A stretch of 43,437 nt of DNA. Source: Octopus bimaculoides (taxonomy: Eukaryota). Of the stretch, positions 899 to 43,210 are shown one piece after another. Each line of letters begins with the position of its first letter. Positions within the stretch are counted from its first letter, which is position 1. The notes under the pieces are model-generated. The model did no database searches and was not told where the DNA came from. It worked only from the letters and a program-made list of their open reading frames with translations. The translations under genes and the position numbers were made by a program. Location: the NCBI RefSeq assembly GCF_001194135.2, contig NC_068984.1, forward strand, positions 118,935,777 through 118,979,213, written 5' to 3'.

Positions 899-1129
899 CG
901 CCCAGATAAATGGATGCAAGACCATTGGTCACTCTGTGACCAAGCATTAACTTTATTACTTTAATATTTTACTGCTTTATGCTTTAAAGTGTGCTTCTTT
1001 TTTGGATATATGATTCATTGATGATAATATAATATGTATATATATATATATACACACACACACACATACATACATGTGTCTGTGTCTGTGTGTGTGCATC
1101 TGTGCACGTGTGTGTGTCTAGGAGTGTAT

Positions 1130-1345
1130 GTTTGACCCTAGCATCACTGTCACTGCTTGATTACTGAAGTTGGTTTGTTTATATCCCTGTAACTCAGTGG
1201 TTCAGCAAAAGAATCTAGTAGAATAAGCACTAATCTTCAAAAAAAAGAAATAAGAAGTGGGATTGATTTGTTGGACTAAACCCTTCAAGGCTGTGTCGCA
1301 GCATGGCCACAGCCCAATGACTGTAACAAGTAAAACATGCAAAAG
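1130..1345 (+). mobile_element. SINE 3' tail module (family C here); similar pieces at ~16790-16920, ~24870-25080, ~25655-25850(-), ~30640-30752, ~41000-41190(-)
   Basis: Recurrent motif gtaact(c/t)ag(t/c)ggttc(a/g)gcaaaag...ataagtac...cagcatggccac...aatgactgaaacaagtaaaag seen at several places in the window. Confidence 0.6.
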
Positions 1346-1389
1346 ACAAAAGACAAAAGGTGATTTGTCAAAAAAATTTTAATTCCTAC

Positions 1390-1899
1390 CTCAATTGGTT
1401 CAGTGAATTCACAATCAAAACTTTTTTCTTCACCATCAAAAATCTTCGTTTCACAGAATTTGGACTTGATCTCCCCTTTCACAGTATGACAAGAATAATG
1501 ATCAAAATCACACATCTGCAATCTCATAATGTAATTTTTCAAATGCTTTTCTTCAACAAATATGGCAAATTTCTCGTTAAAAACTGGATTTTCAGTTTTA
1601 CGTTTAATTCTTGTCTGAACTTCAAGGTCAAGTTTATCAAATGAAAATGATTGAAGGTTTTTGTGCCGGTTGAAATTAAAAATGGATCGTTGGCTCCGAT
1701 AGAGGCGGATGCGTACATAGTTGTCAACTGGTAAAGAATTTGGGTCTGTTAAAATCAAATCATTTGCTTTAATGATTTTGATGGTTAGTTTTTTTAGGTC
1801 TGGTTCGTATTTCAGCTTATATGATAAACGGCCCACTTTTGTTGCTTTAGTTGAGCCGTTGACTGTAGTAGAAGATGGATCACTCTCATTTTCATCCAT
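1390..1899 (-). CDS. Internal exon (510 nt, phase 0/0) encoding the C2A domain of a synaptotagmin-family protein
   Basis: Translation MDENESDPSS...VGRLSYKLKYEPDLKKLTIKIIKANDL...DNYVRIRL...QTRIKRKTENPVFNEKF...MRLQMCDFDHYSCHTVKGEI...EPIE follows the synaptotagmin C2A pattern (GxLxFSLxY, KTxNPVFNExF, DFDxxSxHxxxGE). Acceptor ttcttacag|ATG at 1900/1899; donor GAG|gtagga at 1390/1389. No C2B exon seen, so it presumably lies left of the window. Confidence 0.85.
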
Positions 1900-1999
1900 C
1901 TGTAAGAATTCCATGGAGAAAAATCAATTACTTTAATATACAGAAAATAGCAACAAATAGTATTAGTGAGATTTAAGATGAAAACTGAGTATGAGAAGC

Positions 2000-2492
2000 A
2001 TCAGACATTGTGTGCAAGAGAGAAGACTGCATTGGTTTGGTCATGTGATGTGCATGGATGAGGACATCTGCATAAAGAAGTACTGAGCTCTATTTGTGGA
2101 GGGAGTTGACCCAGGAAGACATGGGATGAAGTGATAAGAAAAGATCTTTAGCTGCCGAGTCTCATGACAAGTGACTGGGAGATGTGGAAATTTGCTGTAC
2201 TTGATAAGACATGTCAAGTAAAATTGCCATCTTTCATACATACAGGCTTGTCCTTTCAGGTGCCAGTGCCACATAAAAATCACCCATGCTGGTGTCACAT
2301 GAACGCACCCATGCCAGTGGGGTGTAAACTCTGTTAAGTGGTTGGCATTAGGAAGGGCATTCAGCTGTAGAATCCATGCTACAACAGACAATTCGAATCT
2401 GGACAGCTCCCTGCTAGCCAACCCCATATCAAACTGTCCAGCCCATACCAGCATGGAAAGTGGACATGATATGATGATGATCATGATGAAAG
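2000..2492 (+). mobile_element. 5'-truncated RTE-clade LINE copy (ORF end plus 3' UTR ending in (TGA)n)
   Basis: tgtgtgcaagagagaagactgca(t/c)tggtttggtcatgtgatg is shared with 7161-7204 (CVQERRLHWFGHVM); followed by the same 3' UTR as 7400-7665. Confidence 0.75.
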
Positions 2493-2689: not shown

Positions 2690-3264
2690 NNNNNNNNNNN
2701 NNNNNNNNNNNNNNNNNNNNNNNNNNNNNNNNNNNNNNNNNNNNNNNNNNNNNNNNNNNNNNNNNNNNNNNNNNNNNNNNNNNNNNNNNNNNNNNNNNNN
2801 NNNNNNNNNNNNNNNNNNNNNNNNNNNNNNNNNNNNNNNNNNNNNNNNNNNNNNNNNNNNNNNNNNNNNNNNNNNNNNNNNNNNNNNNNNNNNNNNNNNN
2901 NNNNNNNNNNNNNNNNNNNNNNNNNNNNNNNNNNNNNNNNNNNNNNNNNNNNNNNNNNNNNNNNNNNNNNNNNNNNNNNNNNNNNNNNNNNNNNNNNNNN
3001 NNNNNNNNNNNNNNNNNNNNNNNNNNNNNNNNNNNNNNNNNNNNNNNNNNNNNNNNNNNNNNNNNNNNNNNNNNNNNNNNNNNNNNNNNNNNNNNNNNNN
3101 NNNNNNNNNNNNNNNNNNNNNNNNNNNNNNNNNNNNNNNNNNNNNNNNNNNNNNNNNNNNNNNNNNNNNNNNNNNNNNNNNNNNNNNNNNNNNNNNNNNN
3201 NNNNNNNNNNNNNNNNNNNNNNNNNNNNNNNNNNNNNNNNNNNNNNNNNNNNNNNNNNNNNNNN
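2690..3264. other. Assembly gap (N run) after a (TA)n tract
   Basis: N characters. Confidence 0.99.
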
Positions 3265-5246: not shown

Positions 5247-5432
5247 NNNNNNNNNNNNNNNNNNNNNNNNNNNNNNNNNNNNNNNNNNNNNNNNNNNNNN
5301 NNNNNNNNNNNNNNNNNNNNNNNNNNNNNNNNNNNNNNNNNNNNNNNNNNNNNNNNNNNNNNNNNNNNNNNNNNNNNNNNNNNNNNNNNNNNNNNNNNNN
5401 NNNNNNNNNNNNNNNNNNNNNNNNNNNNNNNN
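5247..5432. other. Assembly gap
   Basis: N characters. Confidence 0.99.
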
Positions 5433-6381: not shown

Positions 6382-6700
6382 NNNNNNNNNNNNNNNNNNN
6401 NNNNNNNNNNNNNNNNNNNNNNNNNNNNNNNNNNNNNNNNNNNNNNNNNNNNNNNNNNNNNNNNNNNNNNNNNNNNNNNNNNNNNNNNNNNNNNNNNNNN
6501 NNNNNNNNNNNNNNNNNNNNNNNNNNNNNNNNNNNNNNNNNNNNNNNNNNNNNNNNNNNNNNNNNNNNNNNNNNNNNNNNNNNNNNNNNNNNNNNNNNNN
6601 NNNNNNNNNNNNNNNNNNNNNNNNNNNNNNNNNNNNNNNNNNNNNNNNNNNNNNNNNNNNNNNNNNNNNNNNNNNNNNNNNNNNNNNNNNNNNNNNNNNN
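6382..6700. other. Assembly gap inside a (TG)n/(TA)n tract
   Basis: N characters flanked by (TA)n. Confidence 0.99.
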
Positions 6701-6726
6701 TATATATATATATATATATATATATG

Positions 6727-7665
6727 AGGTTATCAGAGTTTTCATATGTGGAAGGTGCACAGGATCCATAAAAACCTTAGAGACTTATGAAATTGATTCT
6801 CTCAAATGTGCTGGTGGCTCATTAGAGGTATTAAATAATTTCTGCTTCTTGGGGAACCAAATTAGTAGTGGGAGAGGATGCACAGAGACTGTGATAAGAA
6901 TAGGGTGGGGGAAATTCAGAGAGCTGTTACCTCTGTTGAGCACAAAAGGTTTCTCTCTCTGAGTGAAAGGAAAATTGTATGATGCATGTATACGGGCAAT
7001 AATTCTACATGGTAGTGAGATGTGGGCTCTGAATGCAGAGGACTTGTGAAGGTTAGAAAGGAATGGGGCAACTATGCTTCGCTGGATGTGTAATGTAAGT
7101 GTACATGTTTGACAGTGCTAGTGTTCTGAGAGAGAAGTTAGTCATAAGAGGAATTAGTCGCTGTGTGCAAGAGAGAAGACTGCACTGGTTTGGTCATGTG
7201 ATGCAGATGGATGCCAACAGCTCCATAAAGAAGTGCCAATCTCTCAGAGTGGATGGAACACATGGAAATGGGAGACCCAGGAAGACATGGCATGAAGTAT
7301 TGAAGAACGACCTCAGGATGCTGAACCTTTCAGGTGAAATGACAAAAGACTGAGATGCCTGGTGCATTGCCATACTCAGGGAGACCTGTACTCCACAACA
7401 GGAGTGTTAAGACTGATCCTTCTGGCGATGTAAAGCTCTCATGGTGGTGCCATATAAAAGCACCGGTGCGGTAGCACATAAAAGCACCCATGCAGTGACG
7501 CGTAAAAGCGTCTGTGTGGGACCACATGAAAGCACCTGTGCAGTGCCATATAAAAGTGCCCCCTGTGGTACCATGTAAAAGCACCCAGCACACTCTGTAA
7601 AATGGTTGGCATTAGAAGGGCATCCAGCTGTAGAAACCGTGTCAAATCAGACTGGAGTTTTAATT
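6727..7665 (+). mobile_element. 5'-truncated RTE-clade LINE: decayed C-terminal ORF plus 3' UTR
   Basis: Frames give FICGRCTGSI...FCFLGNQISSGRGC...IRIGWGKFRELLPLL...KGKLYDAC...LHGSEMW...RCVQERRLHWFGHVMQM...GRPRKTW, typical of RTE reverse transcriptase C-termini, with in-frame stops and frameshifts. Confidence 0.85.
7447..7587 (+). repeat. 24-bp minisatellite, ~6 units (consensus about gtgccacataaaagcacccgtgcg), within the RTE 3' UTR
   Basis: Units start at 7447, 7471, 7495, 7519, 7543 and 7568. Confidence 0.85.
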
Positions 7666-7934: not shown

Positions 7935-8125
7935 CATCATCATTTAGCACCTGCTTTCCATGCTGGCATGGGTTGGGCAGTCTGATAGGAGCTGGCAAGT
8001 CAGAGGACTGCTTTGGAATTGTTTCTATGGCTGGATGTCCTTCCTAACTCCCACCACTTTACAGAGTGGTTTTCATGAGGCACCAGCACCAACGACATCA
8101 CAAAGTATCTTGCAAAACAAGATCC
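7935..8125 (-). mobile_element. RTE 3'-UTR-derived short element (family D)
   Basis: catcattt...ctttccatgctggcatgggttgg...ctggatg.ccttcctaac..caccactttacagagtg is the reverse complement of the 7590-7665 and 2320-2490 tail. Confidence 0.65.
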
Positions 8126-10939: not shown

Positions 10940-11710
10940 CAGGTGTGGTTGTGTGGCTAAGAAGCTTGCTTCCCAACCAGGTGGCTCTGAGTTCAGTTCC
11001 ACTGTGTGACACTTTGGACAAGTGTCTTCTACTATAGCCCTAGGCTGACCAAAGCCTTGTGAGAGGATTTAATAGATGGAAACTGAAAGAAGACCATTGT
11101 GTAATGTATATGTATGTATATGTGCACATGTATATATGTATGTGTGGAGGCATAATGGCCCAGTGGTTAGGGCAGTCGACTTGCGGTCGGGGGATCGCAG
11201 TTTCAATTCCCAGACCGAAAACACCTAAAACTCCATGAGGCTCCGGCAGGGGGTAGTGGCGACCCCTGTCGTACTCTTTCGCCCCCAACTTTCTCTCACT
11301 CTTTCTTCCTGTTTCTTGAGTAAAGCTGCGATGGACTGCCGTCCCGTCCAGCTGGGGGGAACACATACGCCATAGAAACCGGAAAACCAGGCCCATGAGC
11401 TTGGCTAGGCTTTAAAAAGGGCACATAAATGAATAAAAATATATGTATGTATATAAGTGTGTGTGAGTGTGTTTACGTATACCCCTGTCTTGATGTCTTA
11501 TGATGGTTGTAAGCTAGCATTGATATGATGTTCATTTCCAGTCTTCCATGAGCATTATGTGAGGCCATATTGAAATAAAAACCTTGTTTGGAAACAGGCG
11601 ATGTGTCTGGCAACAAGGCATTTGTTGACAGGAAGAGTATCTGGTTGTAGAAAACCTTCCACAACAAATCCCATCTGATCCAAATGAACATGCTAAAACA
11701 ACAATAATGA
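10940..11710 (+). mobile_element. Composite SINE (head B, microsatellite linker, tail E) interrupted by another SINE
   Basis: Head ggtgtggttgtgtggctaagaagcttgcttcc...gacactttggacaagtgtcttctactatagcc (CORE-like); tail ggaaacaggcga..tggcaacaagg...aggaagagtatctggttgtagaaa...; uninterrupted equivalent at 21283-21720. Confidence 0.7.
11144..11438 (+). mobile_element. tRNA-headed SINE: family A head and body with a different 3' tail; 12-bp TSD
   Basis: gtggaggcataatggcccagtggttagggc...gtttcaattcccagacc. TSD ATATATGTATGT at 11132-11143 and 11439-11450. Confidence 0.8.
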
Positions 11711-11960: not shown

Positions 11961-12885
11961 NNNNNNNNNNNNNNNNNNNNNNNNNNNNNNNNNNNNNNNN
12001 NNNNNNNNNNNNNNNNNNNNNNNNNNNNNNNNNNNNNNNNNNNNNNNNNNNNNNNNNNNNNNNNNNNNNNNNNNNNNNNNNNNNNNNNNNNNNNNNNNNN
12101 NNNNNNNNNNNNNNNNNNNNNNNNNNNNNNNNNNNNNNNNNNNNNNNNNNNNNNNNNNNNNNNNNNNNNNNNNNNNNNNNNNNNNNNNNNNNNNNNNNNN
12201 NNNNNNNNNNNNNNNNNNNNNNNNNNNNNNNNNNNNNNNNNNNNNNNNNNNNNNNNNNNNNNNNNNNNNNNNNNNNNNNNNNNNNNNNNNNNNNNNNNNN
12301 NNNNNNNNNNNNNNNNNNNNNNNNNNNNNNNNNNNNNNNNNNNNNNNNNNNNNNNNNNNNNNNNNNNNNNNNNNNNNNNNNNNNNNNNNNNNNNNNNNNN
12401 NNNNNNNNNNNNNNNNNNNNNNNNNNNNNNNNNNNNNNNNNNNNNNNNNNNNNNNNNNNNNNNNNNNNNNNNNNNNNNNNNNNNNNNNNNNNNNNNNNNN
12501 NNNNNNNNNNNNNNNNNNNNNNNNNNNNNNNNNNNNNNNNNNNNNNNNNNNNNNNNNNNNNNNNNNNNNNNNNNNNNNNNNNNNNNNNNNNNNNNNNNNN
12601 NNNNNNNNNNNNNNNNNNNNNNNNNNNNNNNNNNNNNNNNNNNNNNNNNNNNNNNNNNNNNNNNNNNNNNNNNNNNNNNNNNNNNNNNNNNNNNNNNNNN
12701 NNNNNNNNNNNNNNNNNNNNNNNNNNNNNNNNNNNNNNNNNNNNNNNNNNNNNNNNNNNNNNNNNNNNNNNNNNNNNNNNNNNNNNNNNNNNNNNNNNNN
12801 NNNNNNNNNNNNNNNNNNNNNNNNNNNNNNNNNNNNNNNNNNNNNNNNNNNNNNNNNNNNNNNNNNNNNNNNNNNNNNNNNNNNN
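11961..12885. other. Assembly gap
   Basis: N characters. Confidence 0.99.
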
Positions 12886-13877: not shown

Positions 13878-16468
13878 ATAGTTGCAAGTTGATGGCTGAA
13901 AGGGGAAAACATGAGCAAAGAGAAAATTCCAGAGGATCAACAACCTGGGGGGACAATCATCATTCATTATTATTTAACATCTATCTTTCATGCTGGCATG
14001 GGTTGGATGGCTTAACAGGAGCTAGAAAACCAAAGGACTGCACCGAGCTCCATTGTCTGTTTTGGCATGGTTTTCATGACTGGACACCCTTCCTAATGTC
14101 AACCACTTTACAGTGCTGATTGGCTGCTTTTCATGTGGCATCAGCACTGGTGAGGTCTGTTTTGAAATGTTTTTTAAGGTTAGGTGCCCTTCCTAATGCC
14201 CCAACCATTTTACAGAGTGGGTTGGGTGCTTTTTACATGATACCAGCATGGACTGGATATATTGGTTAGAGCAGGGCTTTGGGAATAGACTCAAGGTAGA
14301 TAAAGAATGGAAGAGAGATAAGTAAGTCAGAATTGTTTGAGTAGAAGTGGCATCAATGAACAAGTCAACAATATGGAGCAGAAGCCACAGTAGTAGTGGT
14401 AAAACAAACAGGAGGAGAAGACAGTATGTCTGTGCAGTGGTGTAGCTAGAGTGTGTGCTAACCAGGGAAGCTCTTGATTTTGCCATCCCAAGTCCTCCTG
14501 ATCCCCAAACCTATAAGGTTTATACAGCAAACCAAAAAGAGTCATGCCTCATAAAAGCTTTACCCACTGTTCCCGAATCCAAGCTACACTACTGCATCTG
14601 TGGTCCAAGGGCTGGAAAGTGTTGGTGAGTGACTTCATACCAATTAGTTGAGAACCCATTTAGGGAATTTTGGTTAGCTTTTGTCTATGAGTGTGTGTGT
14701 TAATGTTTCATCCATTTGTTGTGTAGGGCATGTACAAAATGTGTGTTGCATTACTGGCAGAATCTTTAGGGTGTTGGACAAAATACAGTGTGGTATTTGT
14801 TTCATTTTTTCACATTTGACATTCAAATCCTGCTAAAGTCAATTATGTCTTTCATCCTTCTGGAATCAATATAAGAATGTGCCAGTCAATGTACCCTATC
14901 TACAGTCAATGCACCCTATTTGATGGCATAAATAACACCTAGGAATATTAGCTGCATCCCAATTTCCACGGTACATATTCAGTGTAAGGGACAAAACTTT
15001 TTGTAGGAAGCTCAACTTTGCATATGAGATGTGGGGATATAATTTGAGACACTGCCTTTGCATTAAAAAAAAGCATCTTATACACCATCAAATACAGTAA
15101 TTAACTAATTGACTAATTTCCTACCCACGAAAAATTTTTGGCCTTGTGCCTAAATTAGAAGCAATTAATTTGGGGAGGATGGTGGTGTCTGTGTTTTGTA
15201 TGAATTGTGTGAAGTATGTTTTACTCACAGGTGGGGAGCGATGATTATGTGAAGAACGTGCAGCATGGATTACGTGGGTTGTGTTCTGTAATTAGGTGGC
15301 AATTATGTAGAATGTGAATTGCTCATGGTGTTTGAGACATGTTATAGTATCAGGTGCCTATTATGTAAGAGTATCTGTGGTGTTATTTTAATGGGTAGTG
15401 ATAATGTAGATTATGTGTTGTGCAAGTTGTGTTATATTATCTAGTGATATTATTGATACTGTTATTATGTATCAGTAAAGCGGTGAACTGGTAAAATTGG
15501 TAGAGTGTCAGAAAATACTTACCAACATTGCTTCTGGTTCTTTAAGTTCTGAGTTTAAATTTTGCTGCAGTTCGTTTAGTTTATCTTTTTATTCCAGTTA
15601 AGAACTGAGGATGATGCAATCAACCAAATTCTGCCACACACATTCGCACACACACACAAAATTGCTGGCCTTGTGCCAAAATTTGAAACCATTATATATC
15701 AGGAAGTGCACTGAAAGAATGCTCACAGTGTCAGATGAAATGCTTTGTGGTATTTTTTTTTAGACTCTTTGCATTCCAGATACCATTTTTCTTAAGCACC
15801 ACTTGGACAATATTATGTGAATGAAGACACTATTATTGTTGATATTGTTGTTTAACCACGTGTCAGTCTTGACTGAGCACACTTACGATTAAATGCATTC
15901 CAGACATGATTATCCCATCATTTTATATATCAGGGAATACATTTTCTCAAATATCATTTGTTATTTAAAGCGTGTTCTGCTATTTCTATTAAAGTGAGCA
16001 GCCAGACCCTTTCATAGCATAGTTGTATCTAATGTAAACAAGGAATACTCACAGAAAGACTGGTTGCTAACCTCAGTTTAACCCTCATCAAACAGATCTA
16101 TAATCAAAGGCATTCCAGTTGTGACTATCCCATCTCTCTCCTCCAGGTACAGGGTACCCACAACCACATTGTCCTTTATGTTCATATTTTCTGAGACAGC
16201 AGGCTGTAATTTGAAGGATATTTGGTTGCTATTTCTAGCAGGGCAGATGTCTGTGAAGAGGTTCCCTCTAGGGAGAAATCGTAGTTGCAGCAGATTTGAG
16301 ATGAGTTCACTGCCTAGTATCAAAAAAGTTTGGTACAAACAAGACAGTATGCCTTGCCTAAATAAAACTTTGTAATCCCAAGGTTCTGAGTTCAGTCCCA
16401 CAGCATGACACCGAGGATTGACTAATATTTTAAAAGTGGAATATGGTTGACAGAAACTATGACAAAAC

Positions 16469-18189: not shown

Positions 18190-18532
18190 NNNNNNNNNNN
18201 NNNNNNNNNNNNNNNNNNNNNNNNNNNNNNNNNNNNNNNNNNNNNNNNNNNNNNNNNNNNNNNNNNNNNNNNNNNNNNNNNNNNNNNNNNNNNNNNNNNN
18301 NNNNNNNNNNNNNNNNNNNNNNNNNNNNNNNNNNNNNNNNNNNNNNNNNNNNNNNNNNNNNNNNNNNNNNNNNNNNNNNNNNNNNNNNNNNNNNNNNNNN
18401 NNNNNNNNNNNNNNNNNNNNNNNNNNNNNNNNNNNNNNNNNNNNNNNNNNNNNNNNNNNNNNNNNNNNNNNNNNNNNNNNNNNNNNNNNNNNNNNNNNNN
18501 NNNNNNNNNNNNNNNNNNNNNNNNNNNNNNNN
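18190..18532. other. Assembly gap after a (TG)n tract
   Basis: N characters. Confidence 0.99.
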
Positions 18533-18872
18533 CATGACACTTGGCTATCTTTCCGAAGAGATAATCACATCTGACTGTTCCGGCTGATGTTGTTGTTTAA
18601 CCTCGAGTCAGCATTGATTGAATAAACCTATGATCAAAAGCACATTTCATCCTATCATGATCATCCTTGTTTTCATTTTTTTTTTTTTATTCTTTAGGAT
18701 CTTAGGACAATGCTTTTTAAATGGATTTTTGTAGATAGCAACTGTAGGAAGTGAAGTTAATTGCCACATCAACATGGCTGTTCAATGCTACTACTTTTTT
18801 AACCCCAAGCAGATCTTCTACAGATCTGCTGCCTGCATCTTGTATATATTGCAAATAGGGGAATGAACCACT

Positions 18873-18970
18873 ACCATCCTCCAGCAGACAATGGGGCCAT
18901 GAGACCGACTCAGTTTCAGGCTATTTCTGCCCATCCTCAGTTATAAACACCCGGCTGCCAGAGGGATGGC
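18873..18970 (-). ncRNA. Type I hammerhead ribozyme, copy 1 (core 18897-18946; predicted cleavage after GUC between 18903 and 18902)
   Basis: Minus strand: UUAUAA-CUGAGGA-U-GGGC-AGAAAUA-GCCU-GAAAC-UGAGUCG-GUC|UCAUGG. Catalytic core intact; proximal stem I has one mismatch; distal stem CCUCUGGCAG/CUGCUGGAGG. Confidence 0.75.
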
Positions 18971-19226
18971 CAGAGTCCACTCCACCTCACAATATAATAT
19001 AAACAAAGTGATCGTCAGTCACTGATTTGCAATAAGTAAAGTAGCCAGTTGGAAAATCTCAATAACAGATGAGAGTAGTAACTATACTGACAACTAAGGT
19101 TAATTGTCACATCAACATGGTTGTTTGATGTCATTACCATTTTAACCCCAGGTGGATCTTCTACCAGCTGGTTATAGGTGCAGCCTGCACCTTGTATATA
19201 CTGCAAGCAGGGGAGCGAGCCCCTAC

Positions 19227-19319
19227 TATCCTCCAGTAGGCAATGGGATCATGAGACCGACTCAGTTTTGGGTTATTTCTGCCCATCCTCAGTCATGAAC
19301 ACCTGACTACTAGAGGGAT
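19227..19319 (-). ncRNA. Type I hammerhead ribozyme, copy 2 (core 19249-19298; predicted cleavage between 19255 and 19254); G12 mutated to A
   Basis: Minus strand: UCAUGA-CUGAGGA-U-GGGC-AGAAAUA-ACCC-AAAAC-UGAGUCG-GUC|UCAUGA. Perfect 6-bp proximal stem I; distal stem CCUCUAGUAG/CUACUGGAGG. The GAAA-to-AAAA change probably inactivates this copy. Confidence 0.7.
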
Positions 19320-19433
19320 TACCAGAGTCCACTCCGACTTGCAATATATATATATTGAGATTTTCCAGCTGGCTACTTTGCTTGTTGCAAATCAGTGATC
19401 AATGGTCACTTTGTTTACTATATATACACAACA

Positions 19434-19592
19434 GGCTTCTTTCAGTTTCTGTTTACCAAATTCACTTGCAAGGTTTGGGTCAGCCCAAGGCTATAGTAGA
19501 AGATCCTTGCTCAAGGTGCTGTGTAATGGGACTGAACCTGAAACCATGTGGTTGAGAAGCAAAGTTCTTTACCACACGGCCATGCCTGCACC
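19434..19592 (-). mobile_element. SINE head B; other copies at ~27040-27180(-), ~31783-31896(-), ~41610-41720(-)
   Basis: ggcttctttcagtttc.gtttaccaaatt.cact...ggctatagtagaaga...aaccatgtggttg...cttt accacac.gcc. Confidence 0.75.
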
Positions 19593-20228
19593 TTTAAAAA
19601 AACATTCCTTGAAGGAAATTCATAAGTTAAATATATAGAAGATGTGTATATTTTACTCCAGCATGAAATTCAAAACTTGAGACAGAATGCAATCAGTTAT
19701 ATTAACTCTGATACATGACTCCAGTATCTACAAATTAACACTAGGTTGATGAAAGACAAAGTTGGCTTTAACAGGATTTGAACTTAGAACACAAAGGGAC
19801 ATAACTAAATATCAGACATCATTAATTTCAATGTTCTACTGACTCAGCCATAATAATTTATTATATCGGTCGTTCTTTTTCATGTACTTTCCTCTTCTAA
19901 AACTGACTGGGTAGATATAAGATCTCTCAGAAGTGTGTTTATTGGGGGAACGTGATTGCAGCTTAGAGACTAAACAGTGAAGCATACGCTTCACTGGAAA
20001 TCACACATACACAAACAGACACATCAGACATGTTAGGAAAAGAGAGACAGACAGACAGAGAGAAATTTTACTTCTAATCTTAGATTTTGGTTAACTTCCC
20101 ATTTCTTCATGAGTCCATCTTGTAAACTTACTTGTGCCAATTCTTTGGAAACAAATTTTTACTTATTTCCAATGAATGAAAATATCTGTCTCTTATGTAA
20201 CAGTGTATTTTAAGGTGAAGAGAGGGAG

Positions 20229-21282: not shown

Positions 21283-21720
21283 GTGATAAGAAGGCTGATT
21301 CCCAACTGCATGGTCTCAGTCCCACTGCATGGCACATTGGGCAAGTGACTTCTACTATAGCCTTCAGTCAACTAAAGCTTTGTGAGTGTATTTGGCAGAA
21401 GGAAACCGAAAGAAGCCCATTGTGTTTGTGTGTATTTGAATGTGTGTTAAGTTTGTGTCCCCTTGTCTTGACATCATGTGTTAGTTGTAAAATGATTGTC
21501 ACAGTCATACAGGCAGAGTTACTCATTTCCAATATTTTGTGAGAACATATCTGGAATTGGGGAAGTATTACCTTACTTGGAAACAGGTGAGGGTTAGCAA
21601 CAGGAAGGGCATCTAGCCATAAAACATCTGCCACAATAAACTCCATCTGACAAATGCATGCATGGAAAAAAATGTATGTTAAAATGATAACAATGATGAT
21701 GATAATAATAATGATTACAA
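21283..21720 (+). mobile_element. Composite SINE B+E, uninterrupted
   Basis: Head gcacattgggcaagtgacttctactatagcc...gaaaccgaaagaagccc, then tail cttggaaacaggtgagggttagcaacaggaagggcatc...(TGA)n. Confidence 0.7.
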
Positions 21721-24439: not shown

Positions 24440-24659
24440 TGTACCCAGCAGCAGAAATGTTAAGGTCAATCCTGCTGATGGTGTAAAGCACTCATAGTAG
24501 AGCCACATAAAAGCACCTGTGCAGGGTCACGTAAAAACACCCAACACACTCTGTAAAGTGGCTGGCGTTAGGAAGGGCATCCAGCTATAGAAACCATGCC
24601 AAATCAAACAAGAACCTAGTGCAGCTCCCCAGCTTGCCAGCATAGACAACGGACGTTAA

Positions 24660-26760: not shown

Positions 26761-27544
26761 GTTGGATAGGGTCTAGAGATATTGTGCAAGGGTTACTGGA
26801 CTAAAATATTATGTTTTGCAATCACCAGCAAGGCAATCATCTGATGCCCAGTTGAGTAAGAGGGCTTCACAGCAAGCATGGAAGCTGCAGTTGCAAACCC
26901 AGGTGAAGCCAACTGATGGTGGAATAACCTCATGCATGAGCATTGCAGGCATTTTGCATGGGCAACAGTCAGTGATGGTCTTCCTTGGTCATGAGTGGAC
27001 AGTCATCATCATCATGTATGTATGTATGTGTGTATGGCAGGATTCTTTCCAATTCTCTTCACCAAATCTGCTCACAAGACTTTGATTGGTCTGGGGTTAT
27101 AGTAAAAGACATTTTCCCTAGGTGCTACACTGCGGGACTGAACTCAGAAGCATGCAGTTGGGAAGAAAACTTCTTGTGAAATAAAAGTTGACCAAGGATA
27201 ACTAAGGAAGGATATAGTTTGCCAAAGCTGAGAACACAAGACTTCGATAATGAAATTATGTAAAGCTAGATATGCTTAGTGAGATGATCTATCCAACCAA
27301 CATCTTGCAACATGGAAAACGAATATGATTATTAAAACAATCTTTGGGTCTCAAGACAATTTCTTTTACACAGCTGTCAGTCACTCAACAGAATACTCTC
27401 TGCCAGTAATGGAAGTAAGTATACATGTATTTGTCTGTGTATGTATGTATGTATGTATGTATGTATACAAATATTTGTCATCAAAATGATGTGCATAATT
27501 TTTACATTGTTGTCAAAACTGTCAACAGCTCAGTAAATCACTGT

Positions 27545-30204: not shown

Positions 30205-30410
30205 CCTTCGTGCCAGTGGCACGTAAAAGCACCCACTACACTCTCGGAGTGGTTGGCGTTAGGAAGGGCATCCAGCTGTAGAAATTCTACCAAATCCGAT
30301 TGGAGCCTGGTATAGCCACCTGGTTCACCAGTCCTCAGTCAAATCGTCCAACCCATGCTAGCATGGAAAGCGGACGTTAAACGATGATGATGATGATGAT
30401 GTTGATGATG
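30205..30410 (+). mobile_element. Family D element, relatively intact
   Basis: gtgccagtggcacgtaaaagcacccactacactctcggagtggttggcgttaggaagggcatccagctgtag...gcggacgttaaacgatgatg. Confidence 0.8.
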
Positions 30411-31551: not shown

Positions 31552-31770
31552 ATCATCATCATCATCATCATCGTTTAACGTCTGCTTTCCATGCTGGCAT
31601 GGGTTGGACAATTTGAGTGAGGACTGCACCAGGCTCCAATCTGATTTGGCAGAGTTTCTACAGCTGGATGCCCTTCCTAACGCCAACCACTCTGAGAGTG
31701 TAGTGGGTGCTTTTACGTGCCACCGGCACGAGGGCCAGTCACACGGTACTGGCAACGGCCATGCTCAAAA
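31552..31770 (-). mobile_element. Family D element, relatively intact
   Basis: Reverse complement of 30205-30410 with few differences. Confidence 0.8.
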
Positions 31771-31913
31771 AGGTAAAACAGGTTTCTTTCAGCCCAGGAT
31801 TATAGTAGAAGGCCTTTGCCTCAGGTGCTGTGCAGTGGAACTGAACCCAAGACTAAATAGTTGAGAAGGAAGCTTCTTAACCACACAGCCACTCCTATAT
31901 ATCTATAACTCCA

Positions 31914-32463: not shown

Positions 32464-32769
32464 NNNNNNNNNNNNNNNNNNNNNNNNNNNNNNNNNNNNN
32501 NNNNNNNNNNNNNNNNNNNNNNNNNNNNNNNNNNNNNNNNNNNNNNNNNNNNNNNNNNNNNNNNNNNNNNNNNNNNNNNNNNNNNNNNNNNNNNNNNNNN
32601 NNNNNNNNNNNNNNNNNNNNNNNNNNNNNNNNNNNNNNNNNNNNNNNNNNNNNNNNNNNNNNNNNNNNNNNNNNNNNNNNNNNNNNNNNNNNNNNNNNNN
32701 NNNNNNNNNNNNNNNNNNNNNNNNNNNNNNNNNNNNNNNNNNNNNNNNNNNNNNNNNNNNNNNNNNNNN
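32464..32769. other. Assembly gap
   Basis: N characters. Confidence 0.99.
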
Positions 32770-34713: not shown

Positions 34714-34799
34714 NNNNNNNNNNNNNNNNNNNNNNNNNNNNNNNNNNNNNNNNNNNNNNNNNNNNNNNNNNNNNNNNNNNNNNNNNNNNNNNNNNNNNN
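34714..34799. other. Assembly gap
   Basis: N characters. Confidence 0.99.
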
Positions 34800-36630: not shown

Positions 36631-36666
36631 ACTCCATACAGTTTTATGTTGGAACTGTTTAGAGAC

Positions 36667-36948
36667 GCAGGAGTGGCTGTGTGGTAAGTAGCTTGCTTAC
36701 CAACCACATGGTTCTGGGTTCAGTCTCACTGCGTGGCACCTTGGGTAAGTGTCTTCTACTATAGCCTCGGGCCAACCATATATATATGACGGGCTTCTTT
36801 CAGTTTCCGTCTACCAAATCCACTCACAAGGTGTTGGTCAGCCCAAGGCTATAGTAGAAGACACTTGCCCAAGATGCCACGCAGTAGGACTGGACCCGGA
36901 ACCATGTGGTTGGAAAGCAAGCTTCTTACCACTCAACCATGCCTGCAC
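36667..36948. mobile_element. Two SINE B heads in inverted orientation (36667-36778 plus, 36786-36948 minus)
   Basis: caggagtggctgtgtggtaagtagcttgc...ctatagcctcgggccaacc, followed by ...ggtcagcccaaggctatagtagaagacacttgcccaag...aaccatgtggttggaaagcaagcttcttaccac. Confidence 0.85.
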
Positions 36949-37129
36949 CTCTATGTAAAATATATTATAACCAGTCATCAGATTTATGTATGGACCAATA
37001 TGAGCCATGGTCTTGGGGCTCCCAGGATTGGTGGGGAGAAACCTTAAGCTTGAAGTTAAAAATTTAAAAATATATTTACAGCATTCAAATGAATAATTTC
37101 TAATTTTTTCCACTTGTTTACATTTTTCT

Positions 37130-38209: not shown

Positions 38210-38600
38210 AACAAGAATCACCATCTTAGAAATTGTGTCCCTGAATTCCTGTTTTCCATGAAAATATATCCAAGTCATGTGAAAAATATTATCTCACTTG
38301 GAAACAAATGAGGGTTGGTAACAGGAAATGCATCCAGTTGTAGAAAATCTGCCTCAAAGACTGGATGCTAAGCTAAAGTCATTGTCATATCATCATTTAA
38401 CATCCATCTTTCATGCTGACATGGACTGGATGGGTTGACAAGATCCAACAAGCTGGAGGATTGCAACAAGCTCCAATATCTGTTTTGGCATGGTTCCTAC
38501 AGCTGGATGCCCTTCATAATACCATCTACTTTATAGAGAGTAGTGTGTGTTTTATCATATCACCAACACAGGTATGGTCACCATGAAACTTGCAAAATAA
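38210..38600. mobile_element. Tail E fragment (plus, ~38210-38380) abutting a family D copy (minus, ~38385-38600)
   Basis: cttggaaacaaatgagggttggtaacaggaaatgcatccagttgtagaaaatctgcc, then catcatttaacatcc..ctttcatgctgacatgg...cagctggatgcccttc. Confidence 0.65.
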
Positions 38601-41321: not shown

Positions 41322-41356
<35 letters not shown>

Positions 41357-41719
41357 AATGGGCTTCTTTCAGTTTCTGTCTACCATATCTACCAAATGTC
41401 TACCATATGTTCTGAGTTCAAATCCAAGGTCGATAAAATAAAGTATGAACTAAGTTTTGTGGCTGATATAATCAACTGTTCTCATGTCTCCAAATTTTGG
41501 GCCTAATGCCTGTTAGAGATCATAGCTATTATTATCATTAAGGAGGTAAACAAGGTAGCAAGCTGACAGAATTTTTACATGCTGGGCAAAATGCTTAGCA
41601 GTATTTCTCAAGGCATTGTTCGACCTTCAGCTATAGTAGAAAGCACGTATACCCAAGGTGCCACCACACAGTGGGACTGAACCTGGTACCATATGCTTGG
41701 GAGACAAATTTTTAACTAC

Positions 41720-43210
41720 ACAGTCAATTATATCAACCCTATTAGTCACCTGGTACTTATTTAATAAACCACTGATAGGATGAAAGGTAAAAATGGCCTC
41801 GGTGGCATAAAGAGGAATGAAAGGTTGTTAAGCATTTTGTCCAGTGTGCTAAAAACTCTGGCAGCTCACCTCCTTAATAATGGTTTCAACTTCTGGCACA
41901 AGGTTAGCAATTTTGAGGAAGAGTATAAGTTGATTATATCAACCCCAGTGCTTAGCTGGTGCTTATTTCTTTGACCTCGAAACAGCAAAAGGCAATGTTG
42001 ACCTTGGCAGAATTTGAACTTAGAATATAAAAACAGGTGAAATACTGCCTTGCTTACCTCCTTAACCGTTTCGTTACTGTATTTATTTTGAGATGCTTTG
42101 TGTTTCTTTCAATTAATTTTAAATATAACAAAGAATCTAGTAAAATAACTTAGTTATCATTAAGCTGATGTTAGGAACATAAATTGTGACTCAGGTTTGG
42201 TGGAAGATTTTAATTCAAAACTCATGAAAACAAGACATTTGTACTACAGAGCCAGAGGCAGTTTCAGCCATGTTGGTATCGAAAGTGTTAATGATAATAA
42301 TAGCTATGATTTCTAACAGGCATTAGGACCAAAATTTGGAGACACGAAAACAGTTGATTATATCAGCCACAGCACTTAATTGGTGCTTTATTTTATCGAC
42401 CTCGGATTTGAACTCAGAACATAAAGGGCTATAATTAATTATCACAAAGGATTTTGCCAGACACTTTAATGATTCTGCCAATCAACATCCCTACCTACTG
42501 TGATGATGAAGACAATGATAATAACTATTTCCAATTTTTGGCACAAAAACAGCAGTTTTAGGTGTTAGGTGTAGTCAATTACATCAACCTCAGTTGACTG
42601 GCAGTTTATTTCATCAACCCAGAAAAGATAAAAAGCAAAGTTGACCTCAGCAACATTTGAACTCAGAATGTAACGAGCTGGAAGAAATGCTACTAAACAT
42701 TTTGTCCAACATGCTAATGATCCTGCTAGCTCAAATAATTGTTTATAATATGGGCACAAGGCCAGAAATTTGTGGTAGTCAGGTTAGTAAATTCTATTGA
42801 CCCTACTTCTTAATTGGTGCTTCCTTCTATCAATCCCAGAAGGATGAGAAGCGAAATTGATTTGGGTGGGGTTTCAATTTAGAACATAAAGAGCAAGAAC
42901 AAATGCTACACTTTGTCTTTCCAATGCTCTAATGATTCTGCTAATCCAGCATAATAATAATAATGATGATGATGATGATGATGATGATGAAGATAATGAT
43001 TTCAGTTTTTGGTACAAGGCCAGAAATTTCGGGGGAGGGGACAAGTCGATTACATCAACCCCAGTACTCAACTGGTACTTATTTTATAGACCCCGAAAGG
43101 ATGAAAGGCAAAGTTGACCTTGTCAGAATTTGAACTCAGAATATAAAGACAGATGAAATGCAACTAAGCATTTTGCATGATGTGCTAACGATTCTGCCAA
43201 TTTGTCACCT
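41720..43210 (-). mobile_element. Head-to-tail cluster of about six family F SINE copies
   Basis: Units at about 41720, 41880, 42310, 42530, 42750 and 43000; the copy at 43000-43210 is nearest to intact. Confidence 0.75.
42062..42291 (+). mobile_element. Intact piggyBac-like MITE (family H), 222 bp between TTAA duplications
   Basis: TTAA|CCGTTTCGTTAC at 42062-42077 and GTATCGAAAGTG|TTAA at 42276-42291 (imperfect TIRs). Confidence 0.8.

What the first reader, a model, noticed from the sequence alone, without database searches (positions are those of the whole stretch)
18731..19350. Tandem type I hammerhead ribozymes: candidate cephalopod retrozyme / self-cleaving circular RNA element
Seen: two diverged direct repeats, each with on the minus strand stem I'-CUGAGGA-(U)-stem II GGGC/GCCY with loop AGAAAUA-GAAAC-short stem III-GUC|stem I. 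The GUC sites are 352 nt apart (19255 and 18903). The 44-nt core differs at only 3 positions between copies, while the flanks are visibly more diverged. A 10-bp distal stem I shows a compensatory swap (GUAG/CUAC in copy 2, GCAG/CUGC in copy 1), and a UGU sits on the 5' strand next to the proximal stem. Copy 1 keeps the full core; copy 2 has G12A and an A-C mismatch in stem II, and the G12A change and the copy 1 GCCU variant both look like CpG decay of an ancestral GCCCGAAAC. Established: type I hammerheads in 150-400-nt tandem repeats define non-LTR retrozymes and ribozyme satellites (newt satellite 2, Schistosoma Sm-alpha, and coral, mussel and axolotl retrozymes that yield circRNAs), and stem I bulge-loop II contacts speed cleavage. 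Inference: a relic of a retrozyme family making ~350-nt monomer or circular RNAs. I do not recall such a family being described in octopus, but that needs checking.
Basis: partly seen in the sequence, partly recalled or inferred. Interest (0 to 1): 0.92.

Follow-up and report, generated by a model that had tools for sequence, protein, structure and literature searches.

The report
Decayed hammerhead retrozyme relic in octopus
A 0.7-kb stretch of Octopus bimaculoides DNA holds 1.7 head-to-tail copies of a 352-base repeat, each with a mutated type I hammerhead self-cleaving RNA motif; it is most likely a dead remnant of a known kind of mobile element (a non-LTR retrozyme) and not an active or new system.

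Summary
On the minus strand, two hammerhead-like cores (19292-19255 and 18940-18903) lie 352 nt apart and differ at 3 of 38 bases. They sit inside a diverged direct repeat (77% identity). Each has a 6-bp proximal helix I, a 4-bp helix II, a 4-bp helix III, and a 10-bp distal helix I with one compensatory swap.

The full architecture is rare by chance: about 0.001 per shuffled window. The core is the best-conserved 44 nt of the repeat (P=0.03).

Rfam gave no hammerhead hit even at E<=10, and a model I built from four validated retrozyme hammerheads scored both copies within noise.

Neither copy passes a strict descriptor. Copy 2 has G12A. Copy 1 has G10.1-U11.1 and an A-C mismatch in helix I. 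The second unit is truncated, so there are 1.7 units, not 2.

An inverted 65-73-nt piece of the unit, set among TA repeats at the tail of a SINE-like repeat, resembles Penelope-like-element insertions. No RT or endonuclease remnant lies within 6 kb.

One further 5'-truncated copy (73% identity) turned up in a related octopod.

Verdict: an ancient, inactive retrozyme relic, and a new member of a known kind. Interest is modest.

The parts
18997..19348 (-). Unit 2: full 352-nt repeat unit (upstream copy on the minus strand)
   Evidence: Direct repeat families D1 and D2 with spacings of 352 and 343. Pairwise alignment with unit 1.
18745..18996 (-). Unit 1: truncated repeat unit of about 250 nt. 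Homology to unit 2 ends at 18756 in the local alignment and fades by about 18745.
19226..19320 (-). Hammerhead-like motif, copy 2, with extended helix I. The core is 19292-19255 and the predicted cleavage site is 3' of C at 19255. It carries G12A (AAAAC) and a C-A mismatch in helix II. Proximal helix I (UCAUGA/UCAUGA) is intact, and G10.1-C11.1 is kept.
18874..18968 (-). Hammerhead-like motif, copy 1. The core is 18940-18903 and the predicted cleavage site is 3' of C at 18903. The core boxes CUGAGGA / GAAAC / GUC are complete. It has a G10.1-U11.1 wobble and an A-C mismatch at 2.2-1.2 in helix I.
18992..19064 (-). Segment A: the last ~73 nt of unit 2, and the direct counterpart of the inverted segment
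   Evidence: Inverted repeat I1, 73 nt, 85% complementary.
19353..19425 (.). Segment A': an inverted partial copy of the unit's 3' end. The robust part is 19353-19417 (65 nt, 88% identity); the rest is TA-rich. TA repeats flank it on both sides (19419-19426 and about 19342-19352).
   Evidence: sequence.
19427..19598 (-). Flanking SINE-like dispersed repeat in the same orientation. Its TA-rich tail abuts A'. This is context, not part of the repeat unit.
   Evidence: At least seven other copies in the window.

Best explanation
This is an old, inactivated insertion of a non-autonomous, hammerhead-bearing tandem retroelement (a non-LTR retrozyme, the class now linked to Penelope-like elements) in an intergenic part of the Octopus bimaculoides genome.

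Inferred life cycle of the ancestral element:
- A multimeric minus-strand transcript folded into a type I hammerhead in each unit. The fold had a 6-bp proximal helix I, an internal loop and a 10-12-bp distal extension. It also had a 4-bp helix II with loop AGAAAUA, a 4-bp helix III, and one extra U between A9 and G10.1.
- Each ribozyme cut after GUC, releasing 352-nt monomers with 5'-OH and 2',3'-cyclic phosphate ends.
- The monomers were circularised.
- A Penelope-like reverse transcriptase/endonuclease acting in trans copied the circle for more than one round and inserted it at a TA microsatellite at the tail of a SINE-like repeat. This left 1.7 direct units plus a short inverted partial copy.

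Since insertion the units have drifted neutrally to 77% identity, with a transition bias and CpG loss. The upstream ribozyme has lost G12 and the downstream one is weakened, so the locus today is a fossil.

Shown: the motif, the repeat, the inverted piece, the decay pattern, the host species, and one related copy in another octopod.

Inferred: cleavage, circles, Penelope-type mobilisation, and the microsatellite target.
For: Motif and architecture:
- Both cores match; 50 of 52 pair cells form standard pairs, against 29-46% when the partners are slid.
- Copy 1 passes a type I descriptor when one helix I mismatch is allowed.
- Chance is low: 0.028 motifs per window at this core quality, and 2 of 1500 shuffles with a distal helix of at least 8 bp, against 10 bp observed. 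The motif also falls inside a repeat that covers about 1.5% of the window.
- The core is the most conserved 44 nt of the unit.

Fit to the literature:
- Retrozyme monomers are ~300 bp with low GC (PMC7229834); this unit is 352 nt with 44% GC.
- A validated axolotl retrozyme also uses CUGAGGA, and a validated coral one has loop 2 AGAAA.
- Loop 2 ends in AAAUA, like the CAAAUA loop of a widely used type I hammerhead.

Insertion pattern:
- An inverted partial copy next to direct partial tandems, with a microsatellite bias, is the Penelope-like insertion pattern.

Decay:
- 45 transitions to 14 transversions, CpG observed/expected 0.15-0.26, and a CA/TG site at C11.1-G12.

Other:
- Host is O. bimaculoides.
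- A 5'-truncated relative occurs in a related octopod.
- No protein domains in the flanks.
Against: - No Rfam hammerhead hit at gathering score or at E<=10, even on 116-nt slices.
- A covariance model built from four validated retrozyme hammerheads scored the copies 10.6 and 8.2 bits, inside the noise, and misaligned them.
- Neither copy passes the strict descriptor.
- Relaxed descriptors hit shuffled sequence 0.27-0.6 times per window.
- The hammerhead fold is 10-18 kcal/mol above the predicted minimum-energy fold.
- The 116-nt and 352-nt folds are no more stable than shuffles: z = -1.1 to -1.5.
- Only 1.7 units are present, with no other copy in the 43 kb. The one outside copy lacks the 5' half of the ribozyme.
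- Covariation has no power with two sequences.
- With the outside copy as outgroup, GCCU (G10.1-U11.1) could be the ancestral state instead of GCCC.
Confidence: 0.7

Rival explanations
1. A chance hammerhead look-alike. On this reading, the locus is an ordinary local tandem duplication or an uncharacterised repeat with a long imperfect hairpin, and the CUGANGA, GAAA and UH boxes happen to fall in the right places. No ribozyme ever existed.
For: - All covariance-model tests were negative.
- Relaxed descriptors hit shuffled sequence often.
- Both copies need a relaxation to pass.
- The hammerhead fold is not the minimum-energy fold.
- There is no sign of selection since the duplication.
Against: - The full architecture is rare by chance, about 0.001 per window.
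- The motif lies in a head-to-tail repeat of the typical retrozyme period.
- The helix sizes and the extra nucleotide after A9 match features that my descriptor did not require.
- The core is the best-conserved stretch of the repeat.
Confidence: 0.15
2. A piece of an autonomous Penelope-like element: a solo or rearranged pseudo-LTR whose coding part was deleted or lies in the assembly gap, and not a separate non-autonomous retrozyme.
For: - An inverted partial copy lies next to direct partial tandems at a microsatellite.
- The extra nucleotide between A9 and G10.1 is a hallmark of Penelope-element hammerheads.
- An N gap at 18190-18532 lies about 200 nt from the element.
- Retrozymes and pseudo-LTRs are phylogenetically intermixed in Xenopus.
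Against: - No RT or GIY-YIG domain in any open segment of at least 55 aa between 12886 and 26000.
- Metazoan Penelope-element hammerheads are minimal, with no helix III, a helix II of 7-8 bp and a helix I of 4-5 bp. This motif has a helix III of 4 bp, a helix II of 4 bp and a helix I of 6 bp plus an extension.
- The 352-nt period fits a retrozyme monomer, not the ~3-kb spacing of pseudo-LTRs.
Confidence: 0.1
3. A foldback or MITE-like DNA transposon (19425-18992) with 73-bp terminal inverted repeats, followed by a partial duplicate of its interior. The hammerhead-like motif would be incidental.
For: Arms 19353-19425 and 18992-19064 are 85% complementary and 288 nt apart.
Against: - It does not explain the head-to-tail duplication that continues past the right arm.
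- No other copy of the arms occurs in the window.
- The copy in the related octopod carries interior sequence without the arms.
- No target-site duplication can be recognised.
Confidence: 0.05

Closest known systems
Metazoan non-LTR retrozymes (Cervera and de la Pena 2020, PMC7229834): coral Amil224, mussel Mg353, axolotl Ax330/Ax353
   Same: - Head-to-tail repeats of ~200-350 nt, low GC, no ORF, and a type I hammerhead in each unit.
- The CUGAGGA variant also occurs in Ax330.
- Loop 2 AGAAA also occurs in the coral element.
- Helix III is stable enough for cleavage as a monomer, as reported for invertebrate retrozymes.
   Different: - Only 1.7 units, both ribozymes mutated, and no evidence of expression or circles.
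- An extra U lies between A9 and G10.1.
- There is no sequence similarity outside the core boxes.
- A model built from those four hammerheads does not pick this motif out.
Penelope-like element pseudo-LTR hammerheads (Cervera and de la Pena 2014, PMC4209133)
   Same: [quoted passage not shown]
- Tandem arrangement.
- An inverted truncated copy at the upstream end and a microsatellite target.
   Different: - Those are minimal motifs without helix III, with a long helix II (7-8 bp) and a short helix I (4-5 bp), and they flank an RT/GIY-YIG ORF.
- This motif has canonical helix sizes, and no ORF remnant lies within 6 kb.
Schistosoma Sm-alpha and newt satellite 2 hammerheads (classical type I in repetitive DNA)
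   Same: - A 6-bp proximal helix I followed by an internal loop, and a 4-bp helix II.
- Loop 2 ends in AAAUA, as in the CAAAUA loop of the widely used type I hammerhead. That this is the Schistosoma ribozyme is from my own knowledge.
- The motif is embedded in short repeats.
   Different: - The newt and many other metazoan motifs have a 1-2-bp helix III and act as dimers; this one has 4 bp.
- Sm-alpha is itself SINE-like. Here the adjacent SINE-like repeat is a separate family whose other copies lack the hammerhead unit.

Membership tests
Type I hammerhead ribozyme | Conserved core boxes CUGANGA / GAAA / (R)UH in the right order | tested here: met
   Copy 1 has CUGAGGA, GAAAC and GUC. Copy 2 fails at G12 (AAAAC), so the feature is met in one copy of two.
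Type I hammerhead ribozyme | Three helices around the core, with helix I open-ended | tested here: met
   26 pairs in 4 helices. 96% of cells are paired, against 29-46% when slid. There is one broken pair in helix I (copy 1) and one in helix II (copy 2).
Type I hammerhead ribozyme | G10.1-C11.1 pair next to the core | tested here: inconclusive
   G-C in copy 2 and G-U in copy 1. The CA/TG pattern suggests an ancestral CG, but the copy from the related octopod also has GCCU.
Type I hammerhead ribozyme | Match to the Rfam hammerhead covariance models at or above the gathering score | tested here: not met
   No hammerhead hit at gathering score or at E<=10. A custom model gave 10.6 and 8.2 bits, within noise.
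Type I hammerhead ribozyme | Mg2+-dependent self-cleavage 3' of H17 | not testable with these tools
   Needs in vitro transcription.
Non-LTR retrozyme | Head-to-tail tandem repeats (monomer about 150-1000 nt), non-coding, low GC | tested here: met
   Period 352, 1.7 units. GC 44%. No Pfam domain and no homologues of the open frames.
Non-LTR retrozyme | [quoted passage not shown] 2026) | tested here: not met
   Copy 2 has G12A and copy 1 needs a helix I mismatch. TRF does not report the 352-nt period.
Non-LTR retrozyme | Multi-copy family in the genome | tested here: inconclusive
   No other copy in the 43-kb window. One 5'-truncated relative in a related octopod. No cephalopod genome could be searched with these tools.
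Non-LTR retrozyme | Monomer-length circular RNA in vivo | not testable with these tools
   No RNA data. The predicted monomer fold is not unusually stable (z = -1.3).
Penelope-like element | RT plus GIY-YIG ORF between pseudo-LTRs | tested here: not met
   No Pfam hit in open segments of at least 55 aa between 12886 and 26000.
Penelope-like element | Minimal hammerhead (no helix III, long helix II) with a nucleotide between 9 and 10.1 | tested here: not met
   The extra U is present, but helix III has 4 bp and helix II only 4 bp.

The most novel reading that the evidence does not exclude
Octopods may carry a previously undescribed retrozyme family. Its hammerhead combines the canonical type I helices and loop contacts with the extra nucleotide after A9 that marks Penelope-element hammerheads, which would make it an intermediate between the two. 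Intact members elsewhere in the genome might still make ~350-nt circular RNAs.
Probability: 0.25. Interest if true: 0.5.

Novelty: new member of a known kind. Interest (0 to 1): 0.3.

Why it matters
If confirmed genome-wide, it would add cephalopods to the animals known to carry hammerhead retrozymes. I found no paper in the searchable library that describes one in octopus or squid.

Its mixed features, canonical helices plus the Penelope-type extra nucleotide and a Penelope-style insertion, would support the recent proposal that animal retrozymes derive from Penelope-like elements.

The locus itself is a dead copy and has no evident present function.

It also shows a limit of current detection. 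Both the Rfam models and the field's TRF-plus-descriptor pipeline would miss decayed copies like this one.

Tried and rejected
- **Rfam scans.** Whole window at gathering score, 1.1 kb at E<=10, and two 116-nt slices at E<=10. No hammerhead hit; only noise matches to snoRNA and miRNA families.
- **Custom covariance model.** Built from four validated retrozyme hammerheads. It was not discriminating: four stems of fixed sequence dominate the model.
- **Pattern scans.** The core was searched in JGI metagenome contigs and IMG/VR. No matches, as expected for animal DNA.
- **Exact look-up of ten ORFs from the element.** None is in the protein collection.
- **Profile search with the longest frame that is open in both units.** No hits.
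- **Profile of the antisense frame against 1.84 billion representatives.** One true hit (P0004) and two low-complexity false hits. A follow-up search found only P0004 again.
- **Thermodynamic folding** of the motif and of the monomer. Not distinguishable from shuffles, so it is not evidence either way.
- **ARAGORN.** No tRNA call in the SINE-like repeats, so their 'tRNA-derived' origin stays an inference from a B-box-like motif.
- **Literature search for the SRA run numbers.** Nothing found.
- **Idea rejected: the SINE-like repeat and the hammerhead unit form one composite element.** The other SINE copies lack the unit.

Full report
**1. What is in the sequence**

All features below are read on the minus strand.
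- The window holds two near-identical 38-nt cores, at 19292-19255 and 18940-18903. They differ at 3 positions and occur nowhere else in the 43 kb.
- Both cores lie inside a direct repeat with a 352-nt period.
- Unit 2 (19348-18997) is complete.
- Unit 1 (18996 to about 18745-18756) covers only the first ~250 nt. The array therefore has 1.7 units, not two.
- The units are 77% identical (200 of 259 aligned bases), with 45 transitions to 14 transversions.
- CpG observed/expected is 0.15-0.22 in the units and 0.26 in the window.
- Four sites show CA in one unit against TG in the other, the signature of independent CpG decay. One of them is the C11.1-G12 step.

**2. The motif**

- Each core reads: 6-bp proximal helix I, CUGAGGA, one extra U, helix II, loop AGAAAUA, GAAAC, helix III ACUG/CGGU with loop AGU, then C17.
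- Helix II is GGGC/GCCU in copy 1 and GGGC/ACCC in copy 2. Copy 2 reads AAAAC in place of GAAAC.
- Beyond an 8/9-nt internal loop, helix I continues for 10-12 bp.
- On the two-copy alignment, 50 of 52 pair cells form standard pairs, against 29-46% when the 3' partners are slid by 1-3 columns.
- Copy 1 has all core boxes, but also a G10.1-U11.1 wobble and an A-C mismatch at 2.2-1.2.
- Copy 2 has an intact helix I and G10.1-C11.1, but carries G12A and a C-A mismatch in helix II.
- G12 is the general base of the reaction (established knowledge), so copy 2 should be essentially dead.

**3. Is it more than chance?**

- A strict type I descriptor finds nothing in the window.
- Copy 1 passes when one helix I mismatch is allowed. 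Copy 2 passes only if G12 is relaxed to R.
- Such relaxed descriptors hit dinucleotide shuffles 0.27-0.6 times per window, so a bare descriptor hit means little.
- At the observed helix quality the rate falls to 0.028-0.043 per window.
- Only 2 of 1500 shuffles also had a distal helix of at least 8 bp, whereas both real copies have 10 bp.
- The motif also lies inside a repeat that covers about 1.5% of the window.
- It is the least-diverged 44-nt stretch of that repeat (permutation P=0.03).
- Several features my descriptor did not require match the literature:
  - Helix I of 6 bp and helix II of 4 bp is the canonical metazoan type I design (PMC4209133).
  - A validated axolotl retrozyme hammerhead also uses CUGAGGA, and a validated coral one has loop 2 AGAAA.
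  - Loop 2 ends in AAAUA, like the CAAAUA loop of a widely used type I hammerhead.

**4. Evidence against**

Rfam gives no hammerhead hit at gathering score, at E<=10 on 1.1 kb, or on 116-nt slices around either copy.
- A model I built from four validated retrozyme hammerheads scored the copies 10.6 and 8.2 bits, within noise, and misaligned them.
- I read these failures as low sensitivity for a short, mutated motif with an insertion after A9. The field itself uses TRF plus rnabob or RNAmotif descriptors, not covariance models. It is still a failed test and I report it as such.
- The hammerhead fold is 10-18 kcal/mol above the predicted minimum-energy fold.
- Neither the 116-nt motifs nor the 352-nt monomer fold better than shuffles.
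- The single compensatory swap (U-A/C-G in the distal helix) has no statistical weight with two sequences.
- Among single changes in paired columns, four keep a pair and two break one. That is about what neutral transitions would give.
- There is therefore no sign of selection since the duplication. The case rests on the ancestral motif.

**5. Surroundings**

- A SINE-like dispersed repeat lies directly upstream in the same orientation (about 19598-19427). The window holds at least seven further copies of it.
- Its TA-rich tail is followed by an inverted copy (19353-19425; robust part 65 nt at 88% identity) of the last ~73 nt of the unit.
- A short TA run follows, and then unit 2.
- An inverted 5'-truncated copy next to direct partial tandems, together with a bias for microsatellites, is the published insertion pattern of Penelope-like elements.
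- No RT or GIY-YIG remnant occurs in any open segment of at least 55 aa between 12886 and 26000.
- An assembly gap (18190-18532) lies about 200 nt downstream of the element.
- A C2-domain exon at 1390-1899 is 100% identical to an Octopus bimaculoides protein. The host is therefore a cephalopod, and the element lies about 17 kb upstream of that gene's first exon.

**6. Other copies**

- No cephalopod genome could be searched directly.
- I translated frames of the unit and searched the large protein collections. One frame gave nothing.
- The antisense frame gave one true hit, a 68-aa ORF on ~1-kb Logan contigs from three sequencing runs.
- Those contigs carry about 155 nt related to the unit at 73% identity. 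The match starts inside loop 2 (AAAUAGCCUGAAAC) and lacks the 5' half of the ribozyme.
- The same run set contains an orthologue of window 1066-2133 at 83.5% nucleotide identity, so it comes from a related octopod.
- The family is thus not confined to this locus and is old. No intact copy was found.

**7. Interpretation**

- The best explanation (about 0.7) is a fossil of a non-LTR retrozyme. Such an element is transcribed as a multimer, cut by its hammerheads into 352-nt monomers, circularised, and copied for more than one round by a Penelope-type RT/endonuclease acting in trans. I infer it was inserted at a TA microsatellite.
- The motif, the repeat, the inverted piece, the decay pattern, the host species and one related copy are shown. 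Cleavage, circles and the mobilising enzyme are inferred.
- The locus cannot now release a monomer, because the upstream ribozyme carries G12A.
- The rivals are a chance look-alike (0.15), a remnant of an autonomous Penelope-like element (0.1) and a foldback or MITE-like DNA element (0.05).

**8. Novelty**

- Non-LTR retrozymes are described as widespread in metazoans, from cnidarians through molluscs to amphibians.
- Their link to Penelope-like elements has been proposed.
- I found no paper in the searchable library that reports one in octopus or squid, and the recent survey sampled no mollusc.
- This is therefore a new member of a known kind, seen here only as a decayed copy.
- The mix of canonical helices with the Penelope-type extra nucleotide is mildly interesting.
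- Interest: 0.3.

Noticed in passing
window 19427-19598(-), 36775-36953(-), 36658-36772(+), 10940-11103(+), 31780-31891(-), 21316-21425(+), 27038-27175(-), 41355-41721(-): A ~175-nt SINE-like dispersed repeat with a B-box-like GGTTCAGTCCCACTG and a 3' end of GAAACTGAAAGAAGCC followed by a TA/TG microsatellite. There are at least eight copies in 43 kb. ARAGORN calls no tRNA in them.
   Followed up: partly
window 36658-36772(+) and 36775-36953(-): Two copies of that SINE-like repeat lie in inverted orientation only 2 nt apart, forming a ~300-nt palindrome-like structure.
   Followed up: no
window 7957-8069, 24547-24611, 2328-2481, 14046-14115, 38467-38549, 31588-31687, 7582-7652, 14155-14228, 30252-30294; L002 503-644: A second dispersed repeat family. 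It is shared between the window and the related-octopod contig that carries the partial hammerhead unit.
   Followed up: no
window 1390-1899(-); L001: A C2-domain exon 100% identical to residues 1-170 of O. bimaculoides A0A0L8GT86. An orthologous Logan contig (SRR11869391) is 83.5% identical in DNA over 1.1 kb.
   Followed up: partly
window 18676-18688 (minus strand): A run of 13 A, preceded by AATAAA-like sequence, about 60 nt 3' of where unit 1 ends. It could be a poly(A)-type tail or a chance feature of AT-rich DNA.
   Followed up: no
window 18720-18920(-) and 19018-19248(-): The same reading frame is open for 67 and 77 codons in the two units. It has no homologues in 5.8 billion proteins, so it is probably chance.
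   Followed up: yes
window 2690-3264, 5247-5432, 6382-6700, 11961-12885, 18190-18532, 32464-32769, 34714-34799: Seven assembly gaps (runs of N, 2740 bases in all), mostly next to microsatellites. One lies about 200 nt from the element, so its downstream context is incomplete.
   Followed up: no
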